DNA from: Auanema rhodensis
Taxonomy: Eukaryota > Animalia > Nematoda
DNA length: 64,000 nt
Reading direction: 5' to 3'
Assembly: GCA_964057225.1 (NCBI GenBank)
Contig: OZ059899.1
Location: 10,106,001 to 10,170,000, forward strand
A program made the translations under genes and the position numbers. The first letter of the stretch is position 1. Every line of letters begins with the position of its first letter. The notes under the pieces were generated by a model. The model saw only the letters and a program-made list of their open reading frames with translations. It did not search any database and was not told the origin of the DNA. Shown one piece after another: positions 1-64,000 of this stretch.

Positions 1-5
1 GGTCG
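1..5 (+). tRNA. tRNA-Arg(ACG): 3' end (last 5 nt, GGTCG) of a tRNA-Arg(ACG) cut by the window edge
   Basis: GGTCG is followed by TAAA, a T-run and the same trailer seen after every complete copy. Confidence 0.8.
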
Positions 6-1205
6 TAAATTTTTTTTATTTCACTTGTCATTTATAAAAATCGAATTTATCTTCTTCAACAATTATTTTTGCAATGTGTCATAAGAATTTCATAGTTGAA
101 CAAAACGTTTTTTAAGAAGTTTTTTTGTTGTCAATATATATATTTTCCTGGAATTCGAAAGCATTTGGGATGGAAATTAGAAAGAAAAGAACTAGTTTTT
201 CCTACTTTAAAACAAACAATAAGAAATAAAATGAAAAAGATTGTTAGATATCCAATTTAAACTTATACATTTACTTCGATAAAGAGCCTATTAGTTTGAA
301 ATTTTATGTCTTACAGTTCTCCAACAGAACAGACTGATCCTGATTTTTCTACGATTACATAAAACCCTCGTTTGATATAAAAGCATATTGGATAGAAATT
401 TCGAAAGCATTTTGGAATGGAAATTAGAAAGAAAAGAACTAGTTTCTCCTATTTTAAAACAAACAATAAGAAATAAAATGAAGAAGATTGTTAGATATCC
501 AATTTGAACTTATACATTTACTTTGATAAAAAGCCTATTAGATTGGAATTTTCTGTCTTACAGTACTCCAACAGAACAGACTGATCCTGATTTCTCTACG
601 ATTACATTAGCCTCTCGTTTGATATAAAAAAAGAAGAGGGATAACGTTTCCAGGATATCAATGATATCGAATCTAGTGATATTGTAGAAAAATGTAATGT
701 CAGCTCCATAGTTTTTCTCTTAATTTCTCTCATCACAATAGTCTTAGTTTTTTTTCATAAGAGTTTCTGAAATCTTAGTTGAACAAAGCAGTATATATTT
801 CTTTCTGGAATTCGAAAGCATTTGGGATGAAAATTAGAAAGAAAAGAACTAGTTTTTCCTACTTTAAAACAAAAATTAAGAAATAAAATAAAAAAGATTG
901 TTAGATATCCAATTTAAACTTATACATTTACTTCGATAAAGAGCCTATTAGTTTGAAATTTTATGTCTTACAGTTCTCCAACAGAACAGACTGATCCTGA
1001 TTTCTCTATGATTACATAAAACTCTCGTTTGATATAAAAAAAGGAGAGGAATAACGTTTCCAGGATATCAATGATATCCAATTTAGTGATATTGTAAAAA
1101 AATGTAATGTCAGCTCCATAGGTTTTCTCTTAATTTCTCTCATCACAATTGTCTTAGTTTTTTTTCTCATAAGAGTTTCTGAAATCTTAGTTGAACAAGG
1201 CCGCG

Positions 1206-1216
1206 TGGCGCAATGG
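1206..1216 (+). promoter_or_regulatory. Pol III type-2 internal promoter A box (example; present in every tRNA copy)
   Basis: TGGCGCAATGG matches TRGCNNARYGG. Confidence 0.9.
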
Positions 1217-1249
1217 ATAACGCGTCTGCCTACGGAGCAGAAGATTGTA

Positions 1250-1260
1250 GGTTCGAATCC
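1250..1260 (+). promoter_or_regulatory. Pol III B box (example; present in every tRNA copy)
   Basis: GGTTCGAATCC matches GGTTCRANNCC. Confidence 0.9.
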
Positions 1261-1275
1261 TGCCGTGGTCGTAAA

Positions 1276-1282
1276 TTTTTTT
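1276..1282 (+). terminator. Pol III oligo-dT terminator (example; T7-T9 after most copies)
   Basis: tRNA end, then TAAA, then TTTTTTT. Confidence 0.85.
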
Positions 1283-2866
1283 CATTTCACTTGTCATTTA
1301 TAAAAATCGAATTTATCTTCTTCAACGATTATTTTTGCAATGTGTCATAAGAATTTCATAGTTGAACAAAACGTTTTTTAAGAAGTTTTTTTGTTGTCAA
1401 CATATATATTTTCCTGGAATTCGAAAGCATTTGGGATGGAAATTAGAAAGAAAAGAACTAGTTTTTCCTATTTTAAAACAAACAATAAGAAATAAAATGA
1501 AAAAGATTGTTAGATATCCAATTTAAACTTATACATTTACTTTGATAAAGAGCCTATTAGATTGAAATTTTATGTCTTACAGTTCTCCAACAGAACAGAC
1601 TGATCCTGATTTTTCTACGATTACATAAAACTCTCGTTTGATATAAAAGCATATTGGATAGAAATTTCGAAAGCATTTTGGATGGAAATTAGAACGAAAA
1701 GAACTAGTTTTTTCTATTTTAAAACAAACAATAATAAACAGAATGAAAAGATTGTTAGATATCCAATTTTAACTCATACATTTACTTCGATGAAGAGCCT
1801 ATTAGATTGAATTTTTATGTCTTACAGTTCTCCAACAGAACAGACTGATCCTGATTTTTCTACGATTACATAAAACTCTCGTTTGATATACAAAAAGGAG
1901 AGGAATAACGTTTCCAGGATATCAATGATATCGAATCTAGTGATATTGTAGAAAAATGTAATGTCAGCTCCATAGATTTTCTCTTAATTTCTCTCATCAC
2001 AATAGTCTTAGTTTTTTTTCATAAGAGTTTCTGAAATCTTAGTTGAACAAGGCCGTATATATTTTCCTAGAATTCGAAAGCATTTGGAATGGAAATTAGA
2101 AAGAAAAGAACTAGTTTCTTCTATTTTAAAACAAACAATAAGAAATAAAATGAAGAAGATTGTTAGATATCCAATTTGAACTTATACATTTACTTTGATA
2201 AAAAGCCTATTAGATTGGAATTTTCTGTCTTACAGTACTCCAACAGAACAGACTGATCCTGATTTCTCTACGATTACATTAGCCTCTCGTTTGATATAAA
2301 AAAAGAAGAGGGATAACGTTTCCAGGATATCAATGATATCGAATCTAGTGATATTGTAGAAAAATGTAATGTCAGCTCCATAGTTTTTCTCTTAATTTCT
2401 CTCATCACAATAGTCTTAGTTTTTTTTCATAAGAGTTTCTGAAATCTCAGTTGAACAAGGCCGTATATATTTTCCTAGAATTCGAAAGCATTTGGAATGG
2501 AAATTAGAAAGAAAAGAACTAGTTTCTCCTATTTTAAAACAAACAATAAGAAATAAAATGAAGAAGATTGTTAGATATCCAATTTGAACTTATACATTTA
2601 CTTTGATAAAAAGCCTATTAGATTGGAATTTTCTGTCTTACAGTACTCCAACAGAACAGACTGATCCTGATTTCTCTACGATTACATTAGCCTCTCGTTT
2701 GATATAAAAAAAGAAGAGGGATAACGTTTCCAGGATATCAATGATATCGAATCTAGTGATATTGTAAAAAAATGTAATGTCAGCTCCATAGTTTTTCTCT
2801 TAATTTCTCTCATCACAATAGTCTTAGTTTTTTTTCATAAGAGTTTCTGAAATCTTAGTTGAACAA

Positions 2867-2939
2867 GGCCGCGTGGCGCAATGGATAACGCGTCTGCCTA
2901 CGGAGCAGAAGATTGTAGGTTCGAATCCTGCCGTGGTCG
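2867..2939 (+). tRNA. tRNA-Arg(ACG): tRNA-Arg(ACG), copy 2
   Basis: Identical to copy 1; T-run follows. Confidence 0.97.
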
Positions 2940-3472
2940 TAAATTTTTTTTATTTCACTTGTCATTTATAAAAATCGAATTTATCTTCTTCAACAATTAT
3001 TTTTGCAATGTGTCATAAGAATTTCATAGTTGAACAAAACGTTTTTTAAGAAGTTTTTTTGTTGTCAACATATATATTTTCCTGGAATTCGAAAGCATTT
3101 GGGATGGAAATTAGAACGAAAAGAACTAGTTTTTTCTATTTTAAAACAAACAATAATAAACAGAATGAAAAGATTGTTAGATATCCAATTTTAACTTATA
3201 CATTTACTTCGATGAAGAGCCTATTAGATTGAATTTTTATGTCTTACAGTTCTCCAACAGAACAGACTGATTCTGATTTTTCTATGATTACATAAAACTC
3301 TCGTTTGATATACAAAAAGGAGAGGAATAACGTTTCCAGGATATCAATGATATCGAATCTAGTGATACTGTAGAAAAATATAATGTCAGCTCCATAGTTT
3401 TTCTCTTAATTTCTCTCATCACAATAGTCTTAGTTTTTTTTCATAAGAGTTTCTGAAATCTTAGTTGAACAA

Positions 3473-3545
3473 GGCCGCGTGGCGCAATGGATAACGCGTC
3501 TGCCTACGGAGCAGAAGATTGTAGGTTCGAATCCTGCCGTGGTCG
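3473..3545 (+). tRNA. tRNA-Arg(ACG): tRNA-Arg(ACG), copy 3
   Basis: Identical to copy 1. Confidence 0.97.
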
Positions 3546-4324
3546 TAAATTTTTTTCATTTCACTTGTCATTTATAAAAATCGAATTTATCTTCTTCAAC
3601 GATTATTTTTGCAATGTGTCATAAGAATTTCATAGTTGAACAAAACGTTTTTTAAGAAGTTTTTTTGTTGTCAATATATATATTTTCCTGGAATTCGAAA
3701 GCATTTGGGATGGAAATTAGAAAGAAAAGAACTAGTTTTTCCTACTTTAAAACAAACAATAAGAAATAAAATGAAAAAGATTGTTAGATATCCAATTTAA
3801 ACTTGTACATTTACTTCGATAAAGAGCCTATTAGTTTGAAATTTTATATCTTACAGTTCTCCAACAGAACAGACTGATCCTGATTTTTCTACGATTACAT
3901 AAAACTCTCGTTTGATATAAAAGCATATTGGATAGAAATTTCGAAAGCATTTTGGATGGAAATTAGAACGAAAAGAACTAGTTTTTTCTATTTTAAAACA
4001 AACAATAATAAACAGAATGAAAAGAATGTTAGATATCCAATTTTAACTTATACATTTACTTCGATGAAGAGCCTATTAGATTGAATTTTTATGTCTTACA
4101 GTTCTCCAACAGAACAGACTGATTCTGATTTTTCTATGATTACATAAAACTCTCGTTTGATATACAAAAAGGAGAGGAATAACGTTTCCAGGATATCAAT
4201 GATATCGAATCTAGTGATACTGTAGAAAAATATAATGTCAGCTCCATAGTTTTTCTCTTAATTTCTCTCATCACAATAGTCTTAGTTTTTTTTCATAAGA
4301 GTTTCTGAAATCTTAGTTGAACAA

Positions 4325-4397
4325 GGCCGCGTGGCGCAATGGATAACGCGTCTGCCTACGGAGCAGAAGATTGTAGGTTCGAATCCTGCCGTGGTCG
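4325..4397 (+). tRNA. tRNA-Arg(ACG): tRNA-Arg(ACG), copy 4
   Basis: Identical to copy 1. Confidence 0.97.
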
Positions 4398-5585
4398 TAA
4401 ATTTTTTTCATTTCACTTGTCATTTATAAAAATCGAATTTATCTTCTTCAACGATTATTTTTGCAATGTGTCATAAGAATTTCATAGTTGAACAAAACGT
4501 TTTTTAAGAAGTTTTTTTGTTGTCAATATATATATTTTCCTGGAATTCGAAAGCATTTGGGATGGAAATTAGAAAGAAAAGAACTAGTTTTTCCTACTTT
4601 AAAACAAACAATAAAAAATAAAATGAAAAAGATTGTTAGATATCCAATTTAAACTTGTACATTTACTTCGATAAAGTGCCTATTAGTTTGAAATTTTATG
4701 TCTTACAGTTCTCCAACAGAACAGACTGATCCTGATTTTTCTACGATTACATAAAACTCTCGTTTGATATAAAAGCATATTGGATAGAAATTTCGAAAGC
4801 ATTTTGGATGGAAATTAGAACGAAAAGAACTAGTTTTTTCTATTTTAAAACAAACAATAATAAACAGAATGAAAAGATTGTTAGATATCCATTTTTAACT
4901 TATACATTTACTTCGATGAAGAGCCTATTAGATTGAATTTTTATGTCTTACAGTTCTCCAACAGAACAGACTGATCCTGATTTTTCTACGATTACATAAA
5001 ACTCTCGTTTGATATACAAAAAGGAGAGGAATAACGTTTCCAGGATATCAATGATATCGAATCTAGTGATATTGTAGAAAAATGTAATGTCAGCTCCATA
5101 GTTTTTCTCTTAATTTCTCTCATCACAATAGTCTTAGTTTTTTTTCATAAGAGTTTCTGAAATCTTAGTTGAACAAGGCCGTATATATTTTCCTAGAATT
5201 CGAAAGCATTTGGAATGGAAATTAGAAAGAAAAGAACTAGTTTCTCCTATTTTAAAACAAACAATAAGAAATAAAATGAAAAGATTCTTAGATATCCAAT
5301 TTGAACTTATACATTTACTTTGATAAAAAGCCTATTAGATTGGAATTTTCTGTCTTACAGTACTCCAACAGAACAGACTGATCCTGATTTCTCTACGATT
5401 ACATTAGCCTCTCGTTTGATATAAAAAAAGAAGAGGGATAACGTTTCCAGGATATCAATGATATCGAATCTAGTGATATTGTAAAAAAATGTAATGTCAG
5501 CTCCATAGGTTTTCTCTTAATTTCTCTCATCACAATTGTCTTAGTTTTTTTTCTCATAAGAGTTTCTGAAATCTTAGTTGAACAA

Positions 5586-5658
5586 GGCCGCGTGGCGCAA
5601 TGGATAACGCGTCTGCCTACGGAGCAGAAGATTGTAGGTTCGAATCCTGCCGTGGTCG
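5586..5658 (+). tRNA. tRNA-Arg(ACG): tRNA-Arg(ACG), copy 5
   Basis: Identical to copy 1. Confidence 0.97.
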
Positions 5659-6439
5659 TAAATTTTTTTCATTTCACTTGTCATTTACAAAAATCGAATT
5701 TATCTTCTTCAACCATTATTTTTGCAATGTGTCATAAGAATTTCACAGTTGAACAGAACGTTTTTTAAGAAGTTTTTTTGTTGTCAACATATATATTTTT
5801 CTGGAATTCGAAAGCATTTGGGATGGAAATTAGAAAGAAAAGAACTAGTTTTTCCTACTTTAAAACAAACAATAAGAAATAAAATGAAAAAGATTGTTAG
5901 ATATCCAATTTAAACTTATACATTTACTTCGATAAAGAGCCTATTAGTTTGAAATTTTATGTCTTACAGTTCTCCAACAGAACAGACTGATCCTGATATT
6001 TCTACGATTACATAAAACTCTCGTTTGATATAAAAGCATATTGGATAGAAATTTCGAAAGCATTTGGGATGGAAATTAGAAAGAAACAAACTAGTTTTTC
6101 CTACTTTAAAACAAACAATGAGAAACAAAATGAAAAGATTGTTAGATATCCAATTTTAACTTATACATTTACTTCGATGAAGAGCCTATTAGATTGAATT
6201 TTTATGTCTTACAGTTCTCCAACAGAACAGACTGATCCTGATTTTTCTACGATTACATAAAACTCTCGTTTGATATACAAAAAGGAGAGGAATAACGTTT
6301 CCAGGATATCAATGATATCGAATCTAGTGATATTGTAGAAAAATGTAATGTCAGCTCCATAGGTTTTCTCTTAATTTCTCTCATCACAATTGTCTTAGTT
6401 TTTTTTCTCATAAGAGTTTCTGAAATCTTAGTTGAACAA

Positions 6440-6512
6440 GGCCGCGTGGCGCAATGGATAACGCGTCTGCCTACGGAGCAGAAGATTGTAGGTTCGAATC
6501 CTGCCGTGGTCG
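6440..6512 (+). tRNA. tRNA-Arg(ACG): tRNA-Arg(ACG), copy 6
   Basis: Identical to copy 1. Confidence 0.97.
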
Positions 6513-7700
6513 TAAATTTTTTTCATTTCACTTGTCATTTATAAAAATCGAATTTATCTTCTTCAACGATTATTTTTGCAATGTGTCATAAGAATTTCAT
6601 AGTTGAACAAAACGTTTTTTAAGAAGTTTTTTTGTTGTCAACATATATATTTTCCTGGAATTCGAAAGCATTTGGGATGGAAATTAGAAAGAAAAGAACT
6701 AGTTTTTCCTATTTTTAAACAAACAATAAGAAATAAAATGAAAAATATTGTTAGATATCCAATTTAAACTTATACATTTACTTTGATAAAGAGCCTATTA
6801 GATTGAAATTTTATGTCTTACAGTTCTCCAACAGAACAGACTGATCCTGATTTTTCTACGATTACATAAAACTCTCGTTTGATATAAAAGCATATTGGAT
6901 AGAAATTTCGAAAGCATTTTGGATGGAAATTAGAACGAAAAGAACTAGTTTTTTCTATTTTAAAACAAACAATAATAAACAGAATGAAAAGATTGTTAGA
7001 TATCCAATTTTAACTTATACATTTACTTCGAAGAAGAGCCTATTAGATTGAATTTTTATGTCTTACAGTTCTCCAACAGAACAGACTGATCCTGATTTTT
7101 CTACGATTACATAAAACTCTCGTTTGATATACAAAAAGGAGAGGAATAACGTTTCCAGGATATCAATGATATCGAATCTAGTGATATTGTAGAAAAATGT
7201 AATGTCAGCTCCATAGTTTTTCTCTTAATTTCTCTCATCACAATAGTCTTAGTTTTTTTTCATAAGAGTTTCTGAAATCTTAGTTGAACAAGGCCGAATA
7301 TATTTTCCTAGAATTCGAAAGCATTTGGAATGGAAATTAGAAAGAAAAGAACTAGTTTCTCCTATTTTAAAACAAACAATAAGAAATAAAATGAAAAGAT
7401 TCTTAGATATCCAATTTGAACTTATACATTTACTTTGATAAAAAGCCTATTAGATTGGAATTTTCTGTCTTACAGTACTCCAACAGAACAGACTGATCCT
7501 GATTTCTCTACGATTACATTAGCCTCTCGTTTGATATAAAAAAAGAAGAGGGATAACGTTTCCAGGATATCAATGATATCGAATCTAGTGATATTGTAAA
7601 AAAATGTAATGTCAGCTCCATAGGTTTTCTCTTAATTTCTCTCATCACAATTGTCTTAGTTTTTTTTCTCATAAGAGTTTCTGAAATCTTAGTTGAACAA

Positions 7701-7773
7701 GGCCGCGTGGCGCAATGGATAACGCGTCTGCCTACGGAGCAGAAGATTGTAGGTTCGAATCCTGCCGTGGTCG
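7701..7773 (+). tRNA. tRNA-Arg(ACG): tRNA-Arg(ACG), copy 7
   Basis: Identical to copy 1. Confidence 0.97.
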
Positions 7774-8554
7774 TAAATTTTTTTCATTTCACTTGTCATT
7801 TACAAAAATCGAATTTATCTTCTTCAACCATTATTTTTGCAATGTGTCATAAGAATTTCACAGTTGAACAGAACGTTTTTTAAGAAGTTTTTTTGTTGTC
7901 AACATATATATTTTTCTGGAATTCGAAAGCATTTGGGATGGAAATTAGAAAGAAAAGAACTAGTTTTTCCTACTTTAAAACAAACAATAAGAAATAAAAT
8001 GAAAAAGATTGTTAGATATCCAATTTAAACTTATACATTTACTTCGATAAAGAGCCTATTAGTTTGAAATTTTATGTCTTACAGTTCTCCAACAGAACAG
8101 ACTGATCCTGATTTTTCTACGATTACATAAAACTCTCGTTTGATATAAAAGCATATTGGATAGAAATTTCGAAAGCATTTGGGATGAAAATTAGAAAGAA
8201 AAGAACTAGTTTTTCCTACTTTAAAACAAACAAAAAGAAATAAAATAAAAAAGATTGTTAGATATCCAATTTAAACTTATACATTTACTTTGATAAAGAG
8301 CCTATTAGAATGAAATTTTATGTCTTACAGTTCTCCAACAGAACAGACTGATCCTGATTTCTCTATGATTACATAAAACTCTCGTTTGATATAAAAAAAG
8401 GAGAGGAATAACGTTTCCAGGATGTCAATGATATCGAATCTAGTGATATTGTAGAAAAATGTAATGTCAGCTCCATAGTTTTTCTCTTAATTTCTCTCAT
8501 CACAATAGTCTTAGTTTTTTTTTCATAAGAGTTTCTGAAATCTTAGTTGAACCA

Positions 8555-8627
8555 GGCCGCGTGGCGCAATGGATAACGCGTCTGCCTACGGAGCAGAAGA
8601 TTGTAGGTTCGAATCCTGCCGTGGTCG
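8555..8627 (+). tRNA. tRNA-Arg(ACG): tRNA-Arg(ACG), copy 8
   Basis: Identical to copy 1; 5' flank GAACCA. Confidence 0.97.
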
Positions 8628-10637
8628 TAAATTTTTTTCATTTCACTTGTCATTTACAAAAATCGAATTTATCTTCTTCAACCATTATTTTTGCAATGTG
8701 TCATAAGAATTTCACAGTTGAACAGAACGTTTTTTAAGAAGTTTTTTTGTTGTCAACATATATATTTTCCTGAAATTCGAAAGCATTTGGGATGAAAATT
8801 AGAAAGAAAAGAACTAGTTTTTCCTACTTTAAAACAAACAATAAGAAATAAAATGAAAAAGATTGTTAGATATCCAATTTAAACTTATACATTTACTTCG
8901 ATAAAGAGCCTATTAGTTTGAAATTTTATGTCTTACAGTTCTCCAACAGAACAGACTGATCCTGATATTTCTACGATTACATAAAACTCTCGTTTGATAT
9001 AAAAGCATATTGGATAGAAATTTCGAAAGCATTTGGGATGGAAATTAGAAAGAAACAAACTAGTTTTTCCTACTTTAAAACAAACAATGAGAAACAAAAT
9101 GAAAAGATTGTTAGATATCCAATTTTAACTTATACATTTACTTCGATGAAGAGCCTATTAGATTGAATTTTTATGTCTTACAGTTCTCCAACAGAACAGA
9201 CTGATCCTGATTTTTCTACGATTACATAAAACTCTCGTTTGATATACAAAAAGGAGAGGAATAACGTTTCCAGGATATCAATGATATCGAATCTAGTGAT
9301 ATTGTAGAAAAATGTAATGTCAGCTCCATAGGTTTTCTTTTAATTTCTCTCATCACAATTGTCTTAGTTTTTTTTCTCATAAGAGTTTCTGAAATCTTAG
9401 GTGTACAAGGCCGTATATATTTTCCTGGAATTCGAAAGGATTTGGGATGGAAATTAGAAAGAAAAGAACTAGTTTTTCCTACTTTAAAACAAACAATAGG
9501 AGATAAAATGAAAAAGATTGTTAGATATCCAATTTAAACTTATACATTTACTTCGACAAAGAGCCTATTAGTTTGAAATTTCATGTCTTACAGTTCTCCA
9601 ACAGAACAGACTGATCCTGATTTCTCTATGATTACATAAAACTCTCGTTTGATATAAAAAAAGGAGAGGAATAACGTTTCCAGGATATCAATGATATCGA
9701 ATCTAGTGATATTGTAAAAAAATGTAATGTCAGCTCCATAGGTTTTCTCTTAATTTCTCTCATCACAATTGTCTTAGTTTTTTTTCATAAGAGTTTCTGA
9801 AATCTTAGTTGAACAAAGCAGTATATATTTTTTTCTGGAATTCGAAAGCATTTGGGATGAAAATTAGAAAGAAACAAACTAGTTTTTCCTACTTTAAAAC
9901 AAACAATGAGAAACAAAATGAAAAGATTGTTAGATATCCAATTTTAACTTATACATTTACTTCGATGAAGAGCCTATTAGATTGAATTTTTATGTCTTAC
10001 AGTTCTCCAACAGAACAGACTGATCCTGATTTTTCTACGATTACATAAAACTCTCGTTTGATATACAAAAAGGAGAGGAATAACGTTTCCAGGATATCAA
10101 TGATATCGAATCTAGTGATATTGTAGAAAAATGTAATGTCAGCTCCATAGGTTTTCTTTTAATTTCTCTCATCACAATTGTCTTAGTTTTTTTTCTCATA
10201 AGAGTTTCTGAAATCTTAGGTGTACAAGGCCGTATATATTTTCCTGGAATTCGAAAGGATTTGGGATGGAAATTAGAAAGAAAAGAACTAGTTTTTCCTA
10301 CTTTAAAACAAACAATAGGAGATAAAATGAAAAAGATTGTTAGATATCCAATTTAAACTTATACATTTACTTCGATAAAGAGCCTATTAGTTTGAAATTT
10401 CATGTCTTACAGTTCTCCAACAGAACAGACTGATCCTGATTTCTCTATGATTACATAAAACTCTCGTTTGATATAAAAAAAGGAGAGGAATAACGTTTCC
10501 AGGATATCAATGATATCGAATCTAGTGATATTGTAAAAAAATGTAATGTCAGCTCCATAGGTTTTCTCTTAATTTCTCTCATCACAATTGTCTTAGTTTT
10601 TTTTCTCATAAGAGTTTCTGAAATCTTAGTTGAACAA

Positions 10638-12718: not shown

Positions 12719-12791
12719 GGCCGCGTGGCGCAATGGATAACGCGTCTGCCTACGGAGCAGAAGATTGTAGGTTCGAATCCTGCCGTGGTCG
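12719..12791 (+). tRNA. tRNA-Arg(ACG): tRNA-Arg(ACG), copy 10
   Basis: Identical to copy 1. Confidence 0.97.
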
Positions 12792-53200: not shown

Positions 53201-56200
53201 TTGGGATGGAAATTAGAAGGAAAAGAACTAGTTTTTCCTACTTTAAAACAAACAATAAGAAATAAAATAAAAAAGATTGTTAGATATCCAATTTAAACTT
53301 ATACATTTACTTCGATAGAGAGCCTATTAGTTTGAAATTTTATGTCTTACAGTTCTCCAACAGAACAGACTGATCCTGATTTCTCTATGATTACATAAAA
53401 CTCTCGTTTGATATAAAAAAAGAAGAGGAATAACGTTTCCAGGATGTCAATGATATCGAATCTAGTGATATTGTAGAAAAATGTAATGTCAGCTCCATAG
53501 GTTTTCTCTTAATTTCTCTCATCACAATTGTCTTAGTTTTTTTTCTCAAAAGAGTTTCTGAAATCTTAGGTGAACAAGGCCGTATATATTTTTTTCTGGA
53601 ATTCGAAAGCATTTGGGATGGAAATTGGAAAGAAAAGAACTAGTTTTTCCTACTTTAAAACAAACAATGAGAAATAAAATGAAAAAGATTGTTAGATATC
53701 CAATTTAAACTTATACATTTACTTCGATAAAAAGCCTATTAGATTGAAATTTTATGTCTTACAGTTCTCCAACAGAACAGACTGATCCTGATTTCTCTAT
53801 GATTACATAAAACTCTCGTTTGATATAAAAAAAGAAGAGGAATAACGTTTCCAGGATGTCAATGATATCGAATCTAGTGATATTGTAGAAAAATGTAATG
53901 TCAGCTCCATAGGTTTTCTCTTAATTTCTCTCATCACAATTGTCTTAGTTTTTTTTCTCAAAAGAGTTTCTGAAATCTTAGGTGAACAAGGCCGTATATA
54001 TTTTTTTCTGGAATTCGAAAGCATTTGGGATGGAAATTGGAAAGAAAAGAACTAGTTTTTCCTACTTTAAAACAAACAATGAGAAATAAAAAAAAAAAGA
54101 TTGTTAGATATCCAATTTAAACTTATACATTTACTTCGATAAAAAGCCTATTAGTTTGAAGTTTTATGTCTTACAGTTCTCCAACAGAACAGACTGATCC
54201 TGATTTCTCTATGATTACATTAAACTCTCGTTTGATATAAAAAAAGAAGAGGAATAACGTTTCCAGGATGTCAATGATATCGAATCTAGTGATATTGTAG
54301 AAAAATGTAATGTCAGCTCCATAGGTTTTCTCTTAATTTCTCTCATCACAATTGTCTTAGTTTTTTTTCTCATAAGAGTTTCTGAAATCTTAGGTGAACA
54401 AGGCCGTATATATTTTTTTCTGGAATTCGAAAGCATTTGGGATGGATATTAGAAGGAAAAGAACTAGTTTTTCCTACTTTAAAACAAACAATAAGAAATA
54501 AAATAAAAAAGATTGTTAGATATCCAATTAAAACTTATACATTTACTTTGATAAAGAGCCTATTAGATTGAAATTTTATGTCTTACAGTTCTCCAACAGA
54601 ACAGACTGATCCTGATTTCTCTATGATTACATAAAACTCTCGTTTGATATAAAAAAAGAAGAGGAATAACGTTTCCAGGATGTCAATGATATCGAATCTA
54701 GTGATATTGTAGAAAAATGTAATGTCAGCTCTATAGGTTTTCTCTTAATTTCTCTCATCACAATTGTCTTAGTTTTTTTTCTCATAAGAGTTTCTGAAAT
54801 CTTAGGTGAACAAGGCCGTATATATTTTTTTCTGGAATTCGAAAGCATTTGGGATGGAAATTAGAAAGAAAAGAACTAGTTTTTCCTACTTTAAAACAAA
54901 CAATAAGAAATAAAATAAAAAAGATTGTTAGATATCCAATTTAAACTTATACATTTACTTCGATAAAGAGCCTATTAGTTTGAAATTTTATGTCTTACAG
55001 TTCTCCAACAGAACAGACTGATCCTGATTTCTCTATGATTACATAAAACTCTCGTTTGATATAAAAAAAGAAGAGGAATAACGTTTCCAGGATGTCAATG
55101 ATATCGAATCTAGTGATATTGTAGAAAAATGTAATGTCAGCTCCATAGGTTTTCTCTTAATTTCTCTCATCACAATTGTCTCAGTTTTTTTTCTCATAAG
55201 AGTTTCTGAAATCTTAGGTGAACAAGGCCGTATATATTTTTTTCTGGAACTCGAAAGCATTTGGGATGGAAATTAGAAAGAAAAGAACTAGTTTTTCCTA
55301 CTTTCAAACAAACAATAAGAAATAAAATAAAAAAGATTGTTAGATATCCAATTTAAACTTATACATTTACTTCGATAAAGAGCCTATTAGTTTGAAATTT
55401 TATGTCTTACAGTTCTCCAACAGAACAGACTGATCCTGATTTCTCTATGATTACATAAAACTCTCGTTTGATATAAAAAAAGAAGAGGAATAACGTTTCC
55501 AGGATGTCAATGATATCGAATCTAGTGATATTGTAGAAAAATGTAATGTCAGCTCCATAGGTTTTCTCTTAATTTCTCTCATCACAATTGTCTCAGTTTT
55601 TTTTCTCATAAGAGTTTCTGAAATCTTAGGTGAACAAGGCCGTATATATTTTTTTCTGGAATTCGAAAGCATTTGGGATGGAAATTAGAAGGAAAAGAAC
55701 TAGTTTTTCCTACTTTAAAACAAACAATAAGAAATAAAATAAAAAAGATTGTTAGATATCCAATTTAAACTTATACATTTACTTCGATAAAGAGCCTATT
55801 AGTTTGAAATTTTATGTCTTACAGTTCTCCAACAGAACAGACTGATCCTGATTTCTCTATGATTACATAAAACTCTCGTTTGATATAAAAAAAAGAAGAG
55901 GAATAACGTTTCCAGGATGTCAATGATATCGAATCTAGTGATATTGTAGAAAAATGTAATGTCAGCTCCATAGGTTTTCTCTTAATTTCTCTCATCACAA
56001 TTGTCTTAGTTTTTTTTCTTATAAGAGTTTCTGAAATCTTAGGTGAACAAGGCCGTATATATTTTTTTCTGGAATTCGAAAGCATTTGGGATGGATATTA
56101 GAAGGAAAAGAACTAGTTTTTCCTACTTTAAAACAAACAATAAGAAATAAAATAAAAAAGATTGTTAGATATCCAATTTAAACTTATACATTTACTTTGA

Positions 56201-58600
56201 TAAAGAGCCTATTAGATTGAAATTTTATGTCTTACAGTTCTCCAACAGAACAGACTGATCCTGATTTCTCTATGATTACATAAAACTCTCGTTTGATATA
56301 AAAAAAGAAGAGGAATAACGTTTCCAGGATGTCAATGATATCGAATCTAGTGATATTGTAGAAAAATGTAATGTCAGCTCCATAGGTTTTCTCTTAATTT
56401 CTCTCATCACAATTGTCTTAGTTTTTTTTCTCAAAAGAGTTTCTGAAATCTTAGGTGAACAAGGCCGTATATATTTTTTTCTGGAATTCGAAAGCATTTG
56501 GGATGGAAATTGGAAAGAAAAGAACTAGTTTTTCCTACTTTAAAACAAACAATGAGAAATAAAAAAAAAAAGATTGTTAGATATCCAATTTAAACTTATA
56601 CATTTACTTCGATAAAGAGCCTATTAGTTTGAAGTTTTATGTCTTACAGTTCTCCAACAGAACAGACTGATCCTGATTTCTCTATGATTACATTAAACTC
56701 TCGTTTGATATAAAAAAAGAAGAGGAATAACGTTTCCAGGATGTCAATGATATCGAATCTAGTGATATTGTAGAAAAATGTAATGTCAGCTCCATAGGTT
56801 TTCTCTTAATTTCTCTCATCACAATTGTCTTAGTTTTTTTTCTCATAAGAGTTTCTGAAATCTTAGGTGAACAAGGCCGTATATATTTTTTTCTGGAATT
56901 CGAAAGCATTTGGGATGGATATTAGAAGGAAAAGAACTAGTTTTTCCTACTTTAAAACAAACAATAAGAAATAAAATAAAAAAGATTGTTAGATATCCAA
57001 TTAAAACTTATACATTTACTTTGATAAAGAGCCTATTAGATTGAAATTTTATGTCTTACAGTTCTCCAACAGAACAGACTGATCCTGATTTCTCTATGAT
57101 TACATAAAACTCTCGTTTGATATAAAAAAAGAAGAGGAATAACGTTTCCAGGATGTCAATGATATCGAATCTAGTGATATTGTAGAAAAATGTAATGTCA
57201 GCTCTATAGGTTTTCTCTTAATTTCTCTCATCACAATTGTCTTAGTTTTTTTTCTCATAAGAGTTTCTGAAATCTTAGGTGAACAAGGCCGTATATATTT
57301 TTTTCTGGAATTCGAAAGCATTTGGGATGGAAATTAGAAAGAAAAGAACTAGTTTTTCCTACTTTAAAACAAACAATAAGAAATAAAATAAAAAAGATTG
57401 TTAGATATCCAATTTAAACTTATACATTTACTTCGATAAAGAGCCTATTAGTTTGAAATTTTATGTCTTACAGTTCTCCAACAGAACAGACTGATCCTGA
57501 TTTCTCTATGATTACATAAAACTCTCGTTTGATATAAAAAAAGAAGAGGAATAACGTTTCCAGGATGTCAATGATATCGAATCTAGTGATATTGTAGAAA
57601 AATGTAATGTCAGCTCCATAGGTTTTCTCTTAATTTCTCTCATCACAATTGTCTCAGTTTTTTTTCTCATAAGAGTTTCTGAAATCTTAGGTGAACAAGG
57701 CCGTATATATTTTTTTCTGGAACTCGAAAGCATTTGGGATGGAAATTAGAAAGAAAAGAACTAGTTTTTCCTACTTTAAAACAAACAATAAGAAATAAAA
57801 TAAAAAAGATTGTTAGATATCCAATTTAAACTTATACATTTACTTCGATAAAGAGCCTATTAGTTTGAAATTTTATGTCTTACAGTTCTCCAACAGAACA
57901 GACTGATCCTGATTTCTCTATGATTACATAAAACTCTCGTTTGATATAAAAAAAGAAGAGGAATAACGTTTCCAGGATGTCAATGATATCGAATCTAGTG
58001 ATATTGTAGAAAAATGTAATGTCAGCTCCATAGGTTTTCTCTTAATTTCTCTCATCACAATTGTCTCAGTTTTTTTTCTCATAAGAGTTTCTGAAATCTT
58101 AGGTGAACAAGGCCGTATATATTTTTTTCTGGAATTCGAAAGCATTTGGGATGGAAATTAGAAGGAAAAGAACTAGTTTTTCCTACTTTAAAACAAACAA
58201 TAAGAAATAAAATAAAAAAGATTGTTAGATATCCAATTTAAACTTATACATTTACTTCGATAAAGAGCCTATTAGTTTGAAATTTTATGTCTTACAGTTC
58301 TCCAACAGAACAGACTGATCCTGATTTCTCTATGATTACATAAAACTCTCGTTTGATATAAAAAAAAGAAGAGGAATAACGTTTCCAGGATGTCAATGAT
58401 ATCGAATCTAGTGATATTGTAGAAAAATGTAATGTCAGCTCCATAGGTTTTCTCTTAATTTCTCTCATCACAATTGTCTTAGTTTTTTTTCTTATAAGAG
58501 TTTCTGAAATCTTAGGTGAACAAGGCCGTATATATTTTTTTCTGGAATTCGAAAGCATTTGGGATGGATATTAGAAGGAAAAGAACTAGTTTTTCCTACT
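50300..58600 (+). repeat. 5-mer (2060 bp) and 6-mer (2473 bp) higher-order repeats of the 412-bp monomer (boundaries approximate)
   Basis: 50919->52979 and 51743->53803 (2060); 54215->56688, 55039->57512 (GGAACTCG allele) and 55819->58292 (2473). Confidence 0.87.
50306..50717 (+). repeat. Example A monomer (412 bp): tRNA-less, junction GAACAA-GGCCG-TATATATTT
   Basis: TTCGAAAG at 50306 to the next at 50718. Confidence 0.93.
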
Positions 58601-61600
58601 TTAAAACAAACAATAAGAAATAAAATAAAAAAGATTGTTAGATATCCAATTAAAACTTATACATTTACTTCGATAAAGAGCCTATTAGTTTGAAATTTTA
58701 TGTCTTACAGTTCTCCAACAGAACAGACTGATCCTGATTTCTCTATGATTACATAAAACTCTCGTTTGATATACAAAAAGGAGAGGAATAACGTTTCCAG
58801 GATGTCAATGATATCGAATCTAGTGGTATTGTAAAAAAATGTAATGTCAGCTCCATAGGTTTTCTCTTAATTTCTCTCATCACAATTGTCTTAGTTTTTT
58901 TTCTCATAAGAGTTTCTGAAATCTTAGGTGAACAAGGCCGTATATATTTTTTTCTGGAATTCGAAAGCATTTGGGATGGAAATTAGAAGAAAAGAACTAG
59001 TTTTTCCTACTTTAAAACAAACAATAAGAAATAAAATAAAAAAGATTGTTAGATATCCAATTTAAACTTATACATTTATTTCGATAAAGAGCCTATTAGT
59101 TTGAAATTTTATGTCTTACAGTTCTCCAACAGAACAGACTGATCCTGATTTCTCTATGATTACATAAAACTCTCGTTTGATATAAAAAAAGAAGAGGAAT
59201 AACGTTTCCAGGATGTCAATGATATCGAATCTAGTGATATTGTAAAAAAATGTAATGTCAGCTCCATAGGTTCTCTCTTAATTTCTCTCATCACAATTGT
59301 CTTAGTTTTTTTTCTTATAAGAGTTTCTGAAATTTTAGGTGAACAAGGCCGTATATATTTTTTTCTGGAATTCGAAAGCATTTGGGATGGAAATTAGAAA
59401 GAAAAGAACTAGTTTTTCCTACTTTAAAACAAACAATAAGAAATAAAATAAAAAAGATTGTTAGATATCCAATTTAAACTTATACATTTACTTCGATAAA
59501 GAGCCTATTAGTTTGAAATTTTATGTCTTACAGTTCTCCAACAGAACAGACTGATCCTGATTTCTCTATGATTACATAAAACTCTCGTTTGATATAAAAA
59601 AAGAAGAGGAATAACGTTTCCAGGATGTCAATGATATCGAATCTAGTGATATTGTAGAAAAATGTAATGTCAGCTCCATAGGTTTTCTCTTAATTTCTCT
59701 CATCACAATTGTCTTAGTTTTTTTCTCATAAGAGTTTCTGAAATCTTAGGTGAACAAGGCCGTATATATTTTTTTCTGGAATTCGAAAGCATTTGGGATG
59801 GAAATTAGAAAGAAAAGAACTAGTTTTTCCTATTTTAAAACAAACAAAAAAAAAATAAAATGAAAAAGTTTGTTAGATATCCAATTTAAACTTATACATT
59901 TACTTCGATAAAGAGCCTATTAGTTTGAAATTTTATGTCTTACAGTTCTCCAACAGAACAGACTGATCCTGATTTCTCTATGATTACATAAAACTCTCGT
60001 TTGATATAAAAAAAGAAGAGGAATAACGTTTCCAGGATGTCAATGATATCGAATCTAGTGATATTGTAGAAAAATGTAATGTCAGCTCCATAGGTTTTCT
60101 CTTAATTTCTCTCATCACAATTGTCTTAGTTTTTTTTCTCATTAGAGATTCTGAAATCTTAGGTGAACAAGGCCGTATATGTTTTTTTCTGGAATTCGAA
60201 AGCATTTGGGATGGACATTAGAAGGAAAAGAACTAGTTTTTCCTACTTTAAAACAAACAAAAAAAAATGAAATGAAAAAGATTGTTAGATATCCAATTTA
60301 AACTTATACATTTACTTCGATAAAGAGCCTATTAGTTTGAAATTTTATGTCTTACAGTTCTCCAACAGAACAGACTGATCCTGATTTCTCTATGATTACA
60401 TAAAACTCTCGTTTGATATAAAAAAAAAAGAGGAATAACGTTTCCAGGATGTCAATGATATCGAATCTAGTGATATTGTAGAAAAATGTAATGTCAGCTC
60501 CATAGGTTTTCTCTTAATTTCTCTCATCACAATTGTCTTAGTTTTTTTTCTCATTAGAGATTCTGAAATCTTAGGTGAACAAGGCCGTATATGTTTTTTT
60601 CTGGAATTCGAACGCATTTGGGATGGACATTAGAAGGAAAAGAACTAGTTTTTCCTACTTTAAAACAAACAAAAAAAAATGAAATGAAAAAGATTGTTAG
60701 ATATCCAATTTAAACTTATACATTTACTTCGATAAAGAGCCTATTAGTTTGAAATTTTATGTCTTACAGTTCTCCAACAGAATAGACTGATCCTGATATT
60801 TCTACGATTACATAAAACTCTCGTTTGATATAAAAGCATATTGGATAGAAATTTCGAAAGCATTTGGGATGGAAATTAGAAAGAAAAGAACTAGTTTTTC
60901 CTACTTTAAAACAAACAATAAGAAATAAAATAAAAAAGATTGTTAGATATCCAATTTAAACTTATACATTTACTTCGATAAAGAGCCTATTAGTTTGAAA
61001 TTTTATGTCTTACAGTTCTCCAACAGAACAGACTGATCCTGATTTCTCTATGATTACATAAAACTCTCGTTTGATATAAAAAAAGAAGAGGAATAACGTT
61101 TCCAGGATGTCAATGATATCGAATCTAGTGATATTGTAGAAAAATGTAATGTCAGCTCCATAGGTTTTCTCTTAATTTCTCTCATCACAATTGTCTTAGT
61201 TTTTTTCTCATAAGAGTTTCTGAAATCTTAGGTGAACAAGGCCGTATATATTTTTTTCTGGAATTCGAAAGCATTTGGGATGGAAATTAGAAAGAAAAGA
61301 ACTAGTTTTTCCTATTTTAAAACAAACAAAAAAAAATAAAATGAAAAAGTTTGTTAGATATCCAATTTAAACTTATACATTTACTTCGATAAAGAGCCTA
61401 TTAGTTTGAAATTTTATGTCTTACAGTTCTCCAACAGAACAGACTGATCCTGATTTCTCTATGATTACATAAAACTCTCGTTTGATATAAAAAAAGAAGA
61501 GGAATAACGTTTCCAGGATGTCAATGATATCGAATCTAGTGATATTGTAGAAAAATGTAATGTCAGCTCCATAGGTTTTCTCTTAATTTCTCTCATCACA

Positions 61601-63129
61601 ATTGTCTTAGTTTTTTTTCTCATTAGAGATTCTGAAATCTTAGGTGAACAAGGCCGTATATGTTTTTTTCTGGAATTCGAAAGCATTTGGGATGGACATT
61701 AGAAGGAAAAGAACTAGTTTTTCCTACTTTAAAACAAACAAAAAAAAATGAAATGAAAAAGATTGTTAGATATCCAATTTAAACTTATACATTTACTTCG
61801 ATAAAGAGCCTATTAGTTTGAAATTTTATGTCTTACAGTTCTCCAACAGAACAGACTGATCCTGATTTCTCTATGATTACATAAAACTCTCGTTTGATAT
61901 AAAAAAAAAAGAGGAATAACGTTTCCAGGATGTCAATGATATCGAATCTAGTGATATTGTAAAAAAATGTAATGTCAGCTCCATAGGTTTTCTCTTAATT
62001 TCTCTCATCACAATTGTCTTAGTTTTTTTTCTTATAAGAGTTTCTGAAATTTTAGGTGAACAAGGCCGTATATATTTTTTTCTGGAATTCGAAAGCATTT
62101 GGGATGGAAATTAGAAAGAAAAGAACTAGTTTTTCCTATTTTAAAACAAACAAAAAAAATAAAATGAAAAAGATTGTTAGATATCCAATTTAAACTTATA
62201 CATTTACTTCGATAAAGAGCCTATTAGTTTGAAATTTTATGTCTTACAGTTCTCCAACAGAACAGACTGATCCTGATATTTCTACGATTACATAAAACTC
62301 TCGTTTGATATAAAAGCATATTGGATAGAAATTTCGAAAGCATTTGGGATGGAAATTAGAAAGAAACAAACTAGTTTTTCCTACTTTAAAACAAACAATG
62401 AGAAACAAAATGAAAAGATTGTTAGATATCCAATTTTAACTTATACATTTACTTCGATGAAGAGCCTATTAGATTGAATTTTTATGTCTTACAGTTCTCC
62501 AACAGAACAGACTGATCCTGATTTTTCTACGATTACATAAAACTCTCGTTTGATATACAAAAAGGAGAGGAATAACGTTTCCAGGATATCAATGATATCG
62601 AATCTAGTGATATTGTAGAAAAATGTAATGTCAGCTCCATAGGTTTTCTTTTAATTTCTCTCATCACAATTGTCTCAGTTTTTTTTCTCATAAGAGTTTC
62701 TGAAATCTTAGGTGTACAAGGCCGTATATATTTTCCTGGAATTCGAAAGGATTTGGGATGGAAATTAGAAAGAAAAGAACTAGTTTTTCCTACTTTAAAA
62801 CAAACAATAGGAGATAAAATGAAAAAGATTGTTAGATATCCAATTTAAACTTATACATTTACTTCGATAAAGAGCCTATTAGTTTGAAATTTTATGTCTT
62901 ACAGTTCTACAACAGAACAGACTGATCCTGATTTCTCTATGATTACATAAAACTCTCGTTTGATATACAAAAAGGAGAGGAATAACGTTTCCAGGATATC
63001 AATGATATCGAATCTAGTGATATTGTAGAAAAATGTAATGTCAGCTCCATAGGTTTTCTCTTAATTTCTCTCATCACAATTGTCTTAGTTTTTTTTCTCA
63101 TAAGAGTTTCTGAAATCTTAGTTGATCAA

Positions 63130-63202
63130 GGCCGCGTGGCGCAATGGATAACGCGTCTGCCTACGGAGCAGAAGATTGTAGGTTCGAATCCTGCCGTGGT
63201 CG
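63130..63202 (+). tRNA. tRNA-Arg(ACG): tRNA-Arg(ACG), copy 33
   Basis: Identical to copy 1; same context as copy 31, 16948 bp away. Confidence 0.97.
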
Positions 63203-64000
63203 TAAATTTTTTTCATTTCTCTTGTCATTTACAAAAATCGAATTTATCTTCTTCAACCATTTTTTTTGCAATGTGTCATAAGAATTTCACAGTTGAACAG
63301 AACGTTTTTTAAGAAGATTTTTTGTTGTCAACATATATATTTTTCTGGAATTCGAAAGCATTTGGGATGGAAATTAGAAAGAAAAGAACTAGTTTTTCCT
63401 ACTTTAAAACAAACAATAAAAAATGAAATGAAAAAGATTGTTAGATATTCAATTTAAACTTATACATTTACTTCGATAAAGAGCCTATTAGATTGAAATT
63501 TTATGTCTTACAGTTCTCCAACAGAACAGACTGATCCTGATTTTTCTACGATTACATAAAACTCTCGTTTGATATACAAAAAGGAGAGGAATAACGTTTC
63601 CAGGATGTCAATGATATCGAATCTAGTGATATTGTAGAAAAATGTAATGTCAGCTCCATAGGTTTTCTCTTAATTTCTCTCATCACAATTGTCTTAGTTT
63701 TTTTTCTCAAAAGAGTTTCTGAAATCTTAGGTGAACAAGGCCGTATATATTTTTTTCTGGAATTCGAAAGCATTTGGGATGGAAATTGGAAAGAAAAGAA
63801 CTAGTTTTTCCTACTTTAAAACAAACAATGAGAAATAAAATGAAAAAGATTGTTAGATATCCAATTTAAACTTATACATTTACTTCGATAAAAAGCCTAT
63901 TAGATTGAAATTTTATGTCTTACAGTTCTCCAACAGAACAGACTGATCCTGATTTCTCTATGATTACATAAAACTCTCGTTTGATATAAAAAAAGAAGAG

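What the first reader, a model, noticed from the sequence alone, without database searches (positions are those of the whole stretch)
1..64000. Satellite DNA carrying intact tRNA-Arg(ACG) genes, built from three nested modules
Seen: 33 complete co-oriented tRNA-Arg(ACG) genes with A box, B box and terminator sit in an array whose other monomers (A ~410 bp, S ~246 bp) are truncated forms of the same T unit. Inter-tRNA distances are therefore sums of modules (607, 854, 1261, 1431, 1668, 2083). Known: tandem tRNA arrays exist (Entamoeba tRNA-STR arrays, clustered tRNA repeats in Arabidopsis and vertebrates), and tRNA genes recruit TFIIIC/condensin and can act as chromatin barriers, e.g. at S. pombe centromeres. 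Inference: here the spacers are gene-less copies of the gene's own unit, so the density of Pol III/TFIIIC sites could change by unequal crossover. The array may be a dosage amplifier for one isoacceptor or a structural chromosome element. This is the best candidate for an undescribed system in the window.
Basis: partly seen in the sequence, partly recalled or inferred. Interest (0 to 1): 0.8.

Follow-up and report, generated by a model that had tools for sequence, protein, structure and literature searches.

The report
Germline-only tRNA-Arg gene satellite
This is the middle of a roughly 1.7-million-base tandem repeat at the centre of a chromosome of the roundworm Auanema rhodense. The repeat unit is an intact arginine tRNA gene, and most copies have lost the gene through one old deletion. 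The worm very probably discards the whole block from its body cells, so it is a real and tidy case, but a 2026 preprint already reported such arrays in outline.

Summary
The window holds 33 co-oriented, intact tRNA-Arg(ACG) genes and breaks down completely into 151 monomers: 33 T (606-609 bp, with the gene), 88 A (407-413 bp) and 30 S (245-246 bp). A and S each carry one uniform deletion junction. A keeps the first five tRNA bases, so the direction of change was T to A.

The genome is Auanema rhodense (180.9 Mb; the published FISH probes match). The window sits mid-array in a ~1.7-Mb block at the centre of a 21.5-Mb autosome. An August 2026 preprint says such central blocks are eliminated from somatic cells at the 12-cell stage. 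About 839 of the genome's 875 Arg-ACG genes lie in this family.

The tRNA segment varies 4-9 times less than its flanks and is identical to dispersed copies elsewhere. The genes therefore look usable and constrained, but they could serve only the germ line and earliest embryo. A role in somatic dosage or at a centromere barrier does not fit.

The preprint mentions tRNA arrays only in outline. The nested T/A/S architecture is not in its text. This scan has already reported the same system from other windows of this chromosome.

The parts
1..64000 (+). Uninterrupted stretch of the T/A/S tandem array. Partial units lie at 1-153 and 63763-64000; there are 151 whole units between them.
   Evidence: The window is G000:C7:10106001-10170000.
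1..33700 (+). tRNA-rich domain with 30 T, 23 A and 24 S units. Multi-unit blocks such as T-S and T-S-T-S-A are locally duplicated (lags 854, 2115, 6279 and 11973 bp).
33701..64000 (+). Gene-poor domain with 65 A (mostly 412 bp, mean 97.5% identical), 6 S and only 3 T units (tRNAs at 46182, 49261 and 63130).
2481..3087 (+). Example T unit (607 bp). It consists of a 245-bp core, the ~143-bp stretch shared with A units (the gene's 5' flank), the 73-bp tRNA and a ~147-bp 3' trailer.
2867..2939 (+). tRNA-Arg(ACG) gene, canonical sequence. The other 32 start at 1199, 3473, 4325, 5586, 6440, 7701, 8555, 10638, 12719, 13980, 14834, 16098, 16705, 17559, 18413, 19674, 20527, 21381, 22644, 23251, 24104, 25367, 25974, 27405, 28669, 30100, 31363, 32626, 33480, 46182, 49261 and 63130.
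   Evidence: The sequence is identical to six dispersed genes on C1, C3 and C6.
2944..2951 (+). T8 run, 4 nt after the tRNA 3' end. This is a Pol III terminator-type signal.
   Evidence: T7-T8 in 31 of 33 copies.
2073..2480 (+). Example A unit (408 bp). It equals a T unit minus tRNA nt 6-73 and nearly all of the trailer (~197 bp).
2459..2463 (+). GGCCG scar: the first five bases of the tRNA, joined directly to the TATATATTTTCC end of the trailer. This is the same junction in all 88 A units of the window.
   Evidence: The junction has 1,916 matches genome-wide and none before C7.
3694..3939 (+). Example S unit (246 bp). It is the core only, ending in a 21-nt diverged copy of the unit start. The junction is the same in all 30 S units.
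   Evidence: (the 24-bp 2.2-copy rows). There are 346 matches genome-wide, the first at C7:9,528,241.
16705..16777 (+). G2A variant tRNA (also at 20527, 23251 and 25974). It turns the G2-U71 wobble pair into A-U and scores higher on Rfam (60.5 bits).
33480..33552 (+). C40T variant tRNA. G30-C40 becomes G-U, so the pair is kept (55.0 bits).

Best explanation
The window is the middle of a chromosome-specific satellite of about 1.7 Mb at the centre of an Auanema rhodense autosome.

Origin. The founding repeat was a ~608-bp unit (T) holding one tRNA-Arg(ACG) gene with its 5' flank and terminator. One deletion of ~197 bp, running from tRNA base 6 to the end of the 3' trailer, made the gene-less A unit. 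A second single event made the short S unit.

Spread. Unequal exchange, gene conversion and duplication of multi-unit blocks then interleaved the three forms and expanded gene-less tracts. The density of tRNA genes now varies along the array.

The genes. The T copies still look like working Pol III genes, and their RNA-coding part is kept far more constant than the rest of the unit. They are most likely still used, or were until very recently.

Limit on function. The block lies in the central repeat region that this species removes from all somatic cells at the 12-cell stage. Any tRNA supply from it can therefore serve only the germ line and the first embryonic divisions. Somatic cells must rely on the few dispersed copies, and perhaps on small mixed arrays elsewhere.

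Shown here: anatomy, polarity, single origin of the junctions, census, chromosomal position, and relative conservation of the tRNA. Inferred: elimination of this particular block (taken from the preprint's general statement), transcription, and selection.
For: Anatomy and polarity:
- The window breaks down completely into 33 T, 88 A and 30 S units.
- A and S junctions are uniform.
- A keeps GGCCG, which is tRNA nt 1-5. An insertion origin would need those five bases to match by chance.

Census:
- 875 tRNA cores genome-wide, of which 36 are on C1, C3 and C6.
- 1,916 A junctions and 346 S junctions, none before C7.

Identity of the genome:
- Its size is 180,911,798 bp, against 180.9 Mb in the preprint.
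- The preprint's XR-1 and XT-1 FISH probes match 5,045 and 11,199 times, first on C8.
- Six break-motif cores lie 3,495 bp apart on C8, which recalls the preprint's X-linked motif copies spaced 3.5 kb apart; it reports five.

Position:
- C7 is 21,466,504 bp long.
- The AT-1 probe hits samples at 0.5 and 17.5 Mb.
- Sampled stretches of both arms lack tandem repeats.
- The satellite is present in samples from 9.25 to 10.75 Mb and absent at 9.0 and 10.9 Mb.

Constraint on the tRNA:
- In the 33 T units of the window, nucleotide diversity is 0.0038 in the tRNA against 0.031-0.057 in the other segments. It is the lowest of all 73-column windows.
- In 61 T units spread over 1.25 Mb, divergence from the consensus is 0.38% per site in the tRNA, 1.6% in the 5' flank and 3.6% in the 3' flank. 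Variable columns number 7 of 73 against 109 of 273.
- T units differ by up to 8% in their flanks.
- All five variant copies in the window keep their base pairs.
- The tRNA is identical to six dispersed genes with unrelated flanks, and to the copies in two unrelated arrays.
- A box, B box and terminator are present.

Exchange between unit types:
- Some A and T units are 99.7% identical over the shared 385 bp, and the tree needs nine A/T changes.
Against: - No expression, Pol III occupancy or coverage data could be examined, so neither transcription nor elimination of this block was shown here.
- I could not fix the break sites that bound the central block. The break-motif candidates on C7 (7.183, 13.636-13.701 Mb) show no change of composition.
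- The preprint reports H3K9me3 on the eliminated DNA in embryos and argues that eliminated regions are under weak selection. That favours a silent, passive array.
- Seven of 62 sampled T copies (11%) carry changes that break a pair or U33.
- Selection on single copies among about 840 should be weak.
- The copies are related, so the statistical tests overstate independence.
Confidence: 0.75

Rival explanations
1. Passive decaying satellite. The tRNA is only a passenger in germline-restricted junk DNA. The array is silent heterochromatin. The tRNA looks conserved because of recent amplification, or because short-tract or GC-biased conversion against the many other identical tRNA-Arg copies repairs only the 73-bp segment.
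For: - Gene-less units outnumber gene units by more than 2 to 1 genome-wide, and 65 to 3 in the right half of the window.
- 11% of sampled tRNAs carry disruptive changes.
- The preprint sees H3K9me3 on eliminated DNA and proposes weak selection there.
- Homology with the other arrays and the dispersed genes is limited to the tRNA. That is the tract such conversion would homogenise.
Against: - The tRNA and its flanks in one unit have the same age, yet the tRNA varies 4-9 times less.
- T units up to 8% apart in their flanks still share an identical tRNA.
- All window variants preserve pairing.
- A 73-bp homology tract is short for efficient ectopic conversion (established knowledge).
- No decayed T-length unit without a recognisable tRNA exists in the window.
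Confidence: 0.3
2. Structural chromosome element. The chromosome-specific block works in meiotic homologue recognition (pairing-centre-like) or in chromatin organisation through TFIIIC or condensin bound at the B boxes. The tRNA product itself would be irrelevant.
For: - The family is confined to C7 and later contigs.
- The preprint speculates that chromosome-specific central repeats may aid partner choice.
- By established knowledge, TFIIIC sites can recruit condensin.
Against:
- Most units lack the B box.
- Conservation covers the whole tRNA, not only the A and B boxes.
- Five other autosomes are reported to have unrelated central repeats, so no shared sequence feature is required.
Confidence: 0.1
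3. Assembly artefact. The nested module pattern would come from collapsed or mis-joined repeats.
For: The region has low read depth in the published data (about 29-fold) because it is germline-restricted.
Against: - The window has no N.
- Units differ by 3-8%, with orderly local blocks.
- The same junctions recur over more than 1 Mb.
- The assembly is from HiFi reads with a contig N50 of 16.4 Mb, and the authors report mostly unique mapping of reads in the repeats.
Confidence: 0.02

Closest known systems
Germline-restricted tandem repeats and tRNA arrays of Auanema rhodense (Gonzalez de la Rosa et al., bioRxiv 10.64898/2026.08.27.747507)
   Same: It is the same genome. The preprint reports chromosome-specific central repeat blocks on each autosome (AC-I to AC-VI, unit sizes 167-504 bp), 19,554 tRNA genes, and tandem arrays of 'several' tRNA loci in eliminated DNA.
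   Different: The text treats satellites and tRNA arrays as separate classes. It does not name tRNA-Arg, and it does not say that a central satellite is a tRNA gene unit with the gene deleted. Its Tables S3 and S4 could not be read.
Entamoeba tRNA gene arrays (my own knowledge, not checked here)
   Same: Long head-to-tail arrays whose unit holds intact tRNA genes, making up a sizeable share of the genome. A structural role has been proposed for them.
   Different: As far as I know, every Entamoeba unit keeps its genes and the spacers are short tandem repeats. There are no interleaved gene-less deletion derivatives and no somatic elimination.
Xenopus oocyte-type 5S rRNA genes and tandem tDNA repeats (my own knowledge)
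   Same: Thousands of tandem Pol III genes that serve the germ line or oocyte, alongside a small somatic set. This is the closest working analogy if the T copies are expressed.
   Different: In Xenopus the restriction to the oocyte is transcriptional. Here the DNA itself would be discarded from the soma. Expression here is untested.
Arabidopsis Ser/Tyr (SYY) tRNA gene cluster (PMC12308677, abstract seen)
   Same: A tandem tRNA gene cluster lying in heterochromatin, silent in most tissues and active in a restricted context.
   Different: It has a multi-gene unit, is much smaller, has no gene-less derivative monomers, and is retained in all cells.
tRNA-related tandem repeats of amphibians and fish (PolIII/TAN of the newt, OAX of Xenopus, Rana/PolIII; cited in PMC12054243; Harttia satellites, PMC11955569)
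   Same: Satellite families whose monomer derives from a tRNA.
   Different: Those are thought to start from retroposed, degenerate, SINE-like tRNA copies. Here the monomer is a genomic gene unit with its own flanks and terminator, the tRNA is identical to the functional genes, and the dominant monomer has lost the tRNA.

Membership tests
Tandem tRNA gene array | Intact cloverleaf tRNA in each gene-bearing unit | tested here: met
   ARAGORN finds 33 of 33. Rfam tRNA scores 55-60.5 bits against a gathering score of 29.
Tandem tRNA gene array | Internal A and B boxes and a downstream T-run terminator | tested here: met
   Read directly from the sequence. The T run is T7-T8 in 31 copies and TTGTTTT in 2.
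Tandem tRNA gene array | Transcription by RNA polymerase III | not testable with these tools
Satellite DNA | Head-to-tail monomers over hundreds of kilobases | tested here: met
   The family is present in samples from C7:9.25 to 10.75 Mb. There are 1,916 A junctions and 346 S junctions.
Satellite DNA | Monomers without a gene | tested here: met
   This holds for A and S units, which are 118 of the 151 units. Nothing in Rfam other than the tRNAs reaches the gathering score, and only two chance ORFs of 94 aa are found. T units do carry a gene.
A. rhodense autosomal-central germline-restricted repeat (AC type) | The genome is the published A. rhodense assembly | tested here: met
   The size matches. 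The FISH probes match thousands of times. The 3.5-kb spaced motif cluster on X is recovered.
A. rhodense autosomal-central germline-restricted repeat (AC type) | Lies in the central repeat block of an autosome and is specific to that chromosome | tested here: met
   The window lies 0.6 Mb from the contig midpoint. No junction match occurs on C1-C6. Contigs after C7 were not resolved.
A. rhodense autosomal-central germline-restricted repeat (AC type) | Lost from somatic cells (low somatic read depth, flanking break sites with telomere addition) | tested here: inconclusive
   Read depth cannot be tested here. Break-motif candidates on C7 were found at 4.740, 7.183, 13.636-13.701 and 16.204 Mb. 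The inner ones show no change of composition, so the bounds of the central block remain open.
SINE- or retroposon-derived tRNA satellite (PolIII/TAN type) | Monomer descends from a retroposed, degenerate tRNA copy (A-rich tail, no native flanks) | tested here: not met
   The tRNA is identical to the dispersed genes. It is followed by a Pol III terminator, not an A tail.

The most novel reading that the evidence does not exclude
Programmed DNA elimination splits tRNA gene dosage between germ line and soma. About 95% of the tRNA-Arg(ACG) genes (and, by extension, most of the 19,554 tRNA genes) would form a selectively maintained, germline-only reserve that feeds oogenesis and the first cleavages and is then thrown away. 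That would be an 'oocyte-type' Pol III gene set enforced by DNA loss rather than by transcriptional control. The T/A ratio of the array would be its adjustable dosage.
Probability: 0.3. Interest if true: 0.75.

Novelty: new variant of a known kind. Interest (0 to 1): 0.45.

Why it matters
The array shows, junction by junction, how a tandem gene array turns into non-coding satellite DNA. The founding gene is still present and still conserved in about a quarter of the units, so both states can be compared within one array.

Its setting, in DNA that the worm very probably deletes from every body cell, makes a question testable: is the huge tRNA gene excess of this species a germline resource or just tolerated junk? 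The array-specific leader and trailer give a direct molecular handle for that test.

Tried and rejected
1. Locating the break sites that bound the central block.
   - The preprint and the Oscheius papers give the break motif only as figures.
   - TTAGGCTNAGCC gives 37 hits against 2 for the control. Shorter forms are noisy.
   - The inner C7 candidates are weak palindromes and show no repeat/unique transition, so the bounds stay open.
I used 1.3-kb samples instead.
4. Weak Rfam Y_RNA matches in the A-specific segment (23.4 bits against a gathering score of 38, E = 0.42) were rejected as chance.
5. The two 94-aa ORFs in A units were rejected as chance.
6. A recombination origin of the T-to-A deletion between the two copies of the 5'-leader motif was rejected. 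The real junction removes more than that would, and shows no microhomology.
8. The contig is not human, so none of the operators' restrictions applied.
Full report
OBSERVATION

ARAGORN finds 33 tRNA-Arg(ACG) genes in the window, all on the + strand. Rfam's tRNA model matches all 33 well above its gathering score. Twenty-eight copies are identical, four carry G2A and one carries C40T.

Using the conserved start of the monomer as an anchor, bases 154-63762 break down without remainder into 151 units:
- 88 A units of 407-413 bp, 56.9% of the bases;
- 33 T units of 606-609 bp, 31.5%;
- 30 S units of 245-246 bp, 11.6%.

TRF independently reports periods of 245-247 and 407-412. There are no N, no other Rfam family at gathering score, and only two chance ORFs of 94 aa.

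ANATOMY AND POLARITY

A T unit has four parts:
- a 245-bp core;
- a ~143-bp segment that forms the gene's 5' flank;
- the 73-bp tRNA;
- a ~147-bp trailer that starts TAAA followed by a T7-T8 run.

The T run is T7-T8 in 31 of 33 copies; the other two have TTGTTTT. The A and B boxes are canonical.

All 88 A units share one junction, apart from point variants. The 5' flank and the first five tRNA bases (GGCCG) are joined to the last bases of the trailer. Those five bases complete the tRNA exactly, so an insertion origin would need a 1-in-1000 coincidence. The direction of change is therefore T to A, by one deletion of about 197 bp, with no microhomology at the junction.

All 30 S units also share one junction. 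The core is cut at about base 225 and followed by a 21-nt diverged copy of the unit start.

WHERE THIS IS

The window is C7:10,106,001-10,170,000 of a genome of 180,911,798 bp.
- The August 2026 preprint on this species reports an assembly of 180.9 Mb with 19,554 tRNA genes.
- Its XR-1 and XT-1 FISH probe sequences match G000 5,045 and 11,199 times, and the first matches are on C8.
- Six copies of the break-motif core lie exactly 3,495 bp apart on C8. This recalls the X-linked motif copies with 3.5-kb spacing that the preprint describes, though it reports five.

So G000 is that assembly, C8 is the X chromosome, and C7 is an autosome.

Sampling of C7 (21,466,504 bp) gave this layout:
- AT-1-type terminal repeats at both ends;
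- sampled stretches of the two arms without tandem repeats;
- the tRNA-Arg satellite in every sample from 9.25 to 10.75 Mb, and in none at 9.0 or 10.9 Mb.

This is the layout the preprint gives for every autosome. The preprint states that the central repeat block of each autosome is chromosome-specific and is eliminated from somatic cells, starting at the 12-cell stage. The window lies 0.6 Mb from the contig midpoint. Elimination of this particular block is my inference from those statements. I could not examine read depth.

CENSUS

- The 46-nt tRNA core matches the genome 875 times and the reversed control 0 times. Thirty-six matches are on C1, C3 and C6. The remaining 839 or so begin at C7:8,997,112.
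- The A junction matches 1,916 times and the S junction 346 times, and none of these lies before C7. S first appears at 9.528 Mb, and A already at 9.117 Mb.
- About 95% of the genome's Arg-ACG genes therefore belong to this family, and gene-less units outnumber them by more than 2 to 1.
- The right end of the array is inverted: the sample at 10.75 Mb reads on the other strand. That agrees with the 303 reverse A junctions and 100 reverse S junctions.

ARE THE GENES ALIVE?

Six dispersed Arg-ACG genes on C1, C3 and C6 have unrelated flanks and their own T-run terminators. Their 73-nt sequence is identical to the array copy. Two other arrays share nothing with the C7 unit except the tRNA: one with a Thr-TGT/Arg-ACG/Thr-CGT unit on C3, and one with a Glu-CTC/Arg-ACG unit on C6.

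Variation among T units points the same way:
- Among the 33 T units of the window, nucleotide diversity is 0.0038 in the tRNA against 0.031-0.057 in the other three segments. The tRNA is the least variable of all 73-column windows.
- Among 61 T units spread over 1.25 Mb, divergence from the consensus is 0.38% per site in the tRNA, 1.6% in the 5' flank and 3.6% in the 3' flank. Seven of 73 tRNA columns vary, against 109 of 273 flank columns.
- T units differ by up to 8% in their flanks.
- The five variant copies in the window all keep base pairing. G2A turns a G-U pair into A-U and scores higher on Rfam.

There are limits to this evidence. Across the wider sample, 7 of 62 copies (11%) carry a change that breaks a pair or U33, one of them at a transposon junction. 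The copies are related, so the tests overstate independence. Still, the tRNA and its flanks in one unit have the same age, so recency alone cannot explain a 4- to 9-fold contrast. I read this as constraint on the RNA-coding part, present now or until recently.

DYNAMICS

Over the 385 bp that A and T units share, some A/T pairs are 99.7% identical, while the mean is about 95%. A tree of that shared part needs nine A/T state changes even though the junction arose once. The presence or absence of the tRNA segment has therefore been moved between backgrounds by unequal exchange or conversion.

The left 33.7 kb of the window is tRNA-rich, with duplicated multi-unit blocks at lags of 854, 2115, 6279 and 11973 bp. 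The right 30 kb is a homogeneous tract of 412-bp A units (97.5% identical) with three T units.

MECHANISM AND RIVALS

Most likely (0.75 for the package) this is a germline-restricted satellite born from a tRNA-Arg gene array, with surviving and constrained gene copies.
- Shown here: anatomy, polarity, single-origin junctions, census, chromosomal position, relative conservation.
- Inferred: somatic elimination of this block, transcription, selection.

The main rival (0.3) is a silent, passive array. It would be kept uniform in the tRNA by ectopic or GC-biased conversion. The preprint's H3K9me3 signal on eliminated DNA and its argument for weak selection there fit this rival.

A structural or pairing role (0.1) is the preprint's own speculation for the central repeats and could not be tested. 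An assembly artefact is very unlikely (0.02).

Somatic dosage amplification is excluded if the block is eliminated. The centromere-barrier analogy does not apply to holocentric chromosomes (established knowledge).

COMPARISON AND NOVELTY

Tandem tRNA arrays and tRNA-derived satellites are known kinds:
- arrays: Entamoeba, Xenopus, and the Arabidopsis SYY cluster;
- tRNA-derived satellites: PolIII/TAN, OAX and the Harttia satellites.

The preprint already reports tRNA arrays in the eliminated DNA of this very genome. Three things are not in its text:
- this central satellite is itself a tRNA-Arg gene unit with the gene deleted;
- the T, A and S forms are interleaved;
- the surviving genes are conserved.

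Its supplementary tables could not be read. Earlier notes of this scan describe the same system from other windows of this chromosome, so this is not the first sighting within the scan. I rate it a new variant of a known kind, of moderate interest.

LIMITS

I could not fix the break sites around the central block. A core motif taken from a C7 site is strongly enriched (TTAGGCTNAGCC, 37 hits against 2 for the control). It marks plausible terminal boundaries at 4.740 and 16.204 Mb. The inner candidates at 7.183 and 13.636-13.701 Mb are weak and show no change of composition.

Noticed in passing
L058:465-3722 (C7:10,176,064-10,179,321, about 6 kb beyond the window end): A ~3.26-kb insertion interrupts the array. 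Its left end abuts the core at about base 137 and its right end abuts tRNA base 3, so about 270 bp of the unit are missing and that tRNA starts GCCCG. I confirmed only the insertion and its junctions. The longest ORFs are 138 and 131 aa.
   Followed up: partly
L046 (C7:10,750,001-10,751,300): The satellite reads on the opposite strand here, so the right end of the array is inverted. This fits the 303 reverse A junctions and 100 reverse S junctions, against at most 10 reverse tRNA cores.
   Followed up: partly
G000 genome-wide; C7:4,740,345 and 4,740,943; C8:14,217,207-14,234,692: The core TTAGGCT-N-AGCC (telomere seed plus palindrome) has 37 hits against 2 for the control and marks likely elimination break sites. 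On C7 a mirrored pair sits 598 bp apart at the left terminal boundary. On C8 (the X chromosome) six copies lie exactly 3,495 bp apart.
   Followed up: partly
L055 (C3:17,684,400-17,687,000) and L056 (C6:15,373,300-15,376,300): Two other tandem arrays carry the identical tRNA-Arg(ACG) in unrelated multi-gene units: Thr-TGT / Arg-ACG / Thr-CGT on C3 and Glu-CTC / Arg-ACG on C6. The C3 array lies about 0.37 Mb inside a candidate break site at 18.089 Mb, so it may be retained in the soma.
   Followed up: partly
window 16705, 20527, 23251, 25974: The G2A variant converts the G2-U71 wobble pair of the acceptor stem into A-U and scores higher on Rfam than the canonical copy (60.5 against 58.3 bits). 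It may be a neutral or slightly improved allele spreading within the array.
   Followed up: partly
window 3440-3472 and 3618-3643 (each T unit): The motif just upstream of the tRNA (TCATAAGAGTTTC...TAGTTGAACAA) recurs about 75 nt into the 3' trailer. This is possibly the trace of an older duplication of the gene's 5' flank. It is only marginally above chance: 13 of 300 shuffles reach the score.
   Followed up: partly
L037 (C7:8,250,001-8,251,300) and L017 (C7:8,500,001-8,504,000): Other repeats lie left of the Arg satellite in the central region: a GC-rich (53%) stretch with a 370-bp period and a 42%-GC stretch with a 60-bp period. Neither was identified.
   Followed up: no
L053 (C7:12,400,001-12,401,300): An open frame runs through the whole 1.3-kb sample, with a weak aspartyl-protease match (Pfam PF13650, 20.5 bits, below the cut-off). 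It is possibly a retroelement in the arm that looked free of tandem repeats.
   Followed up: no
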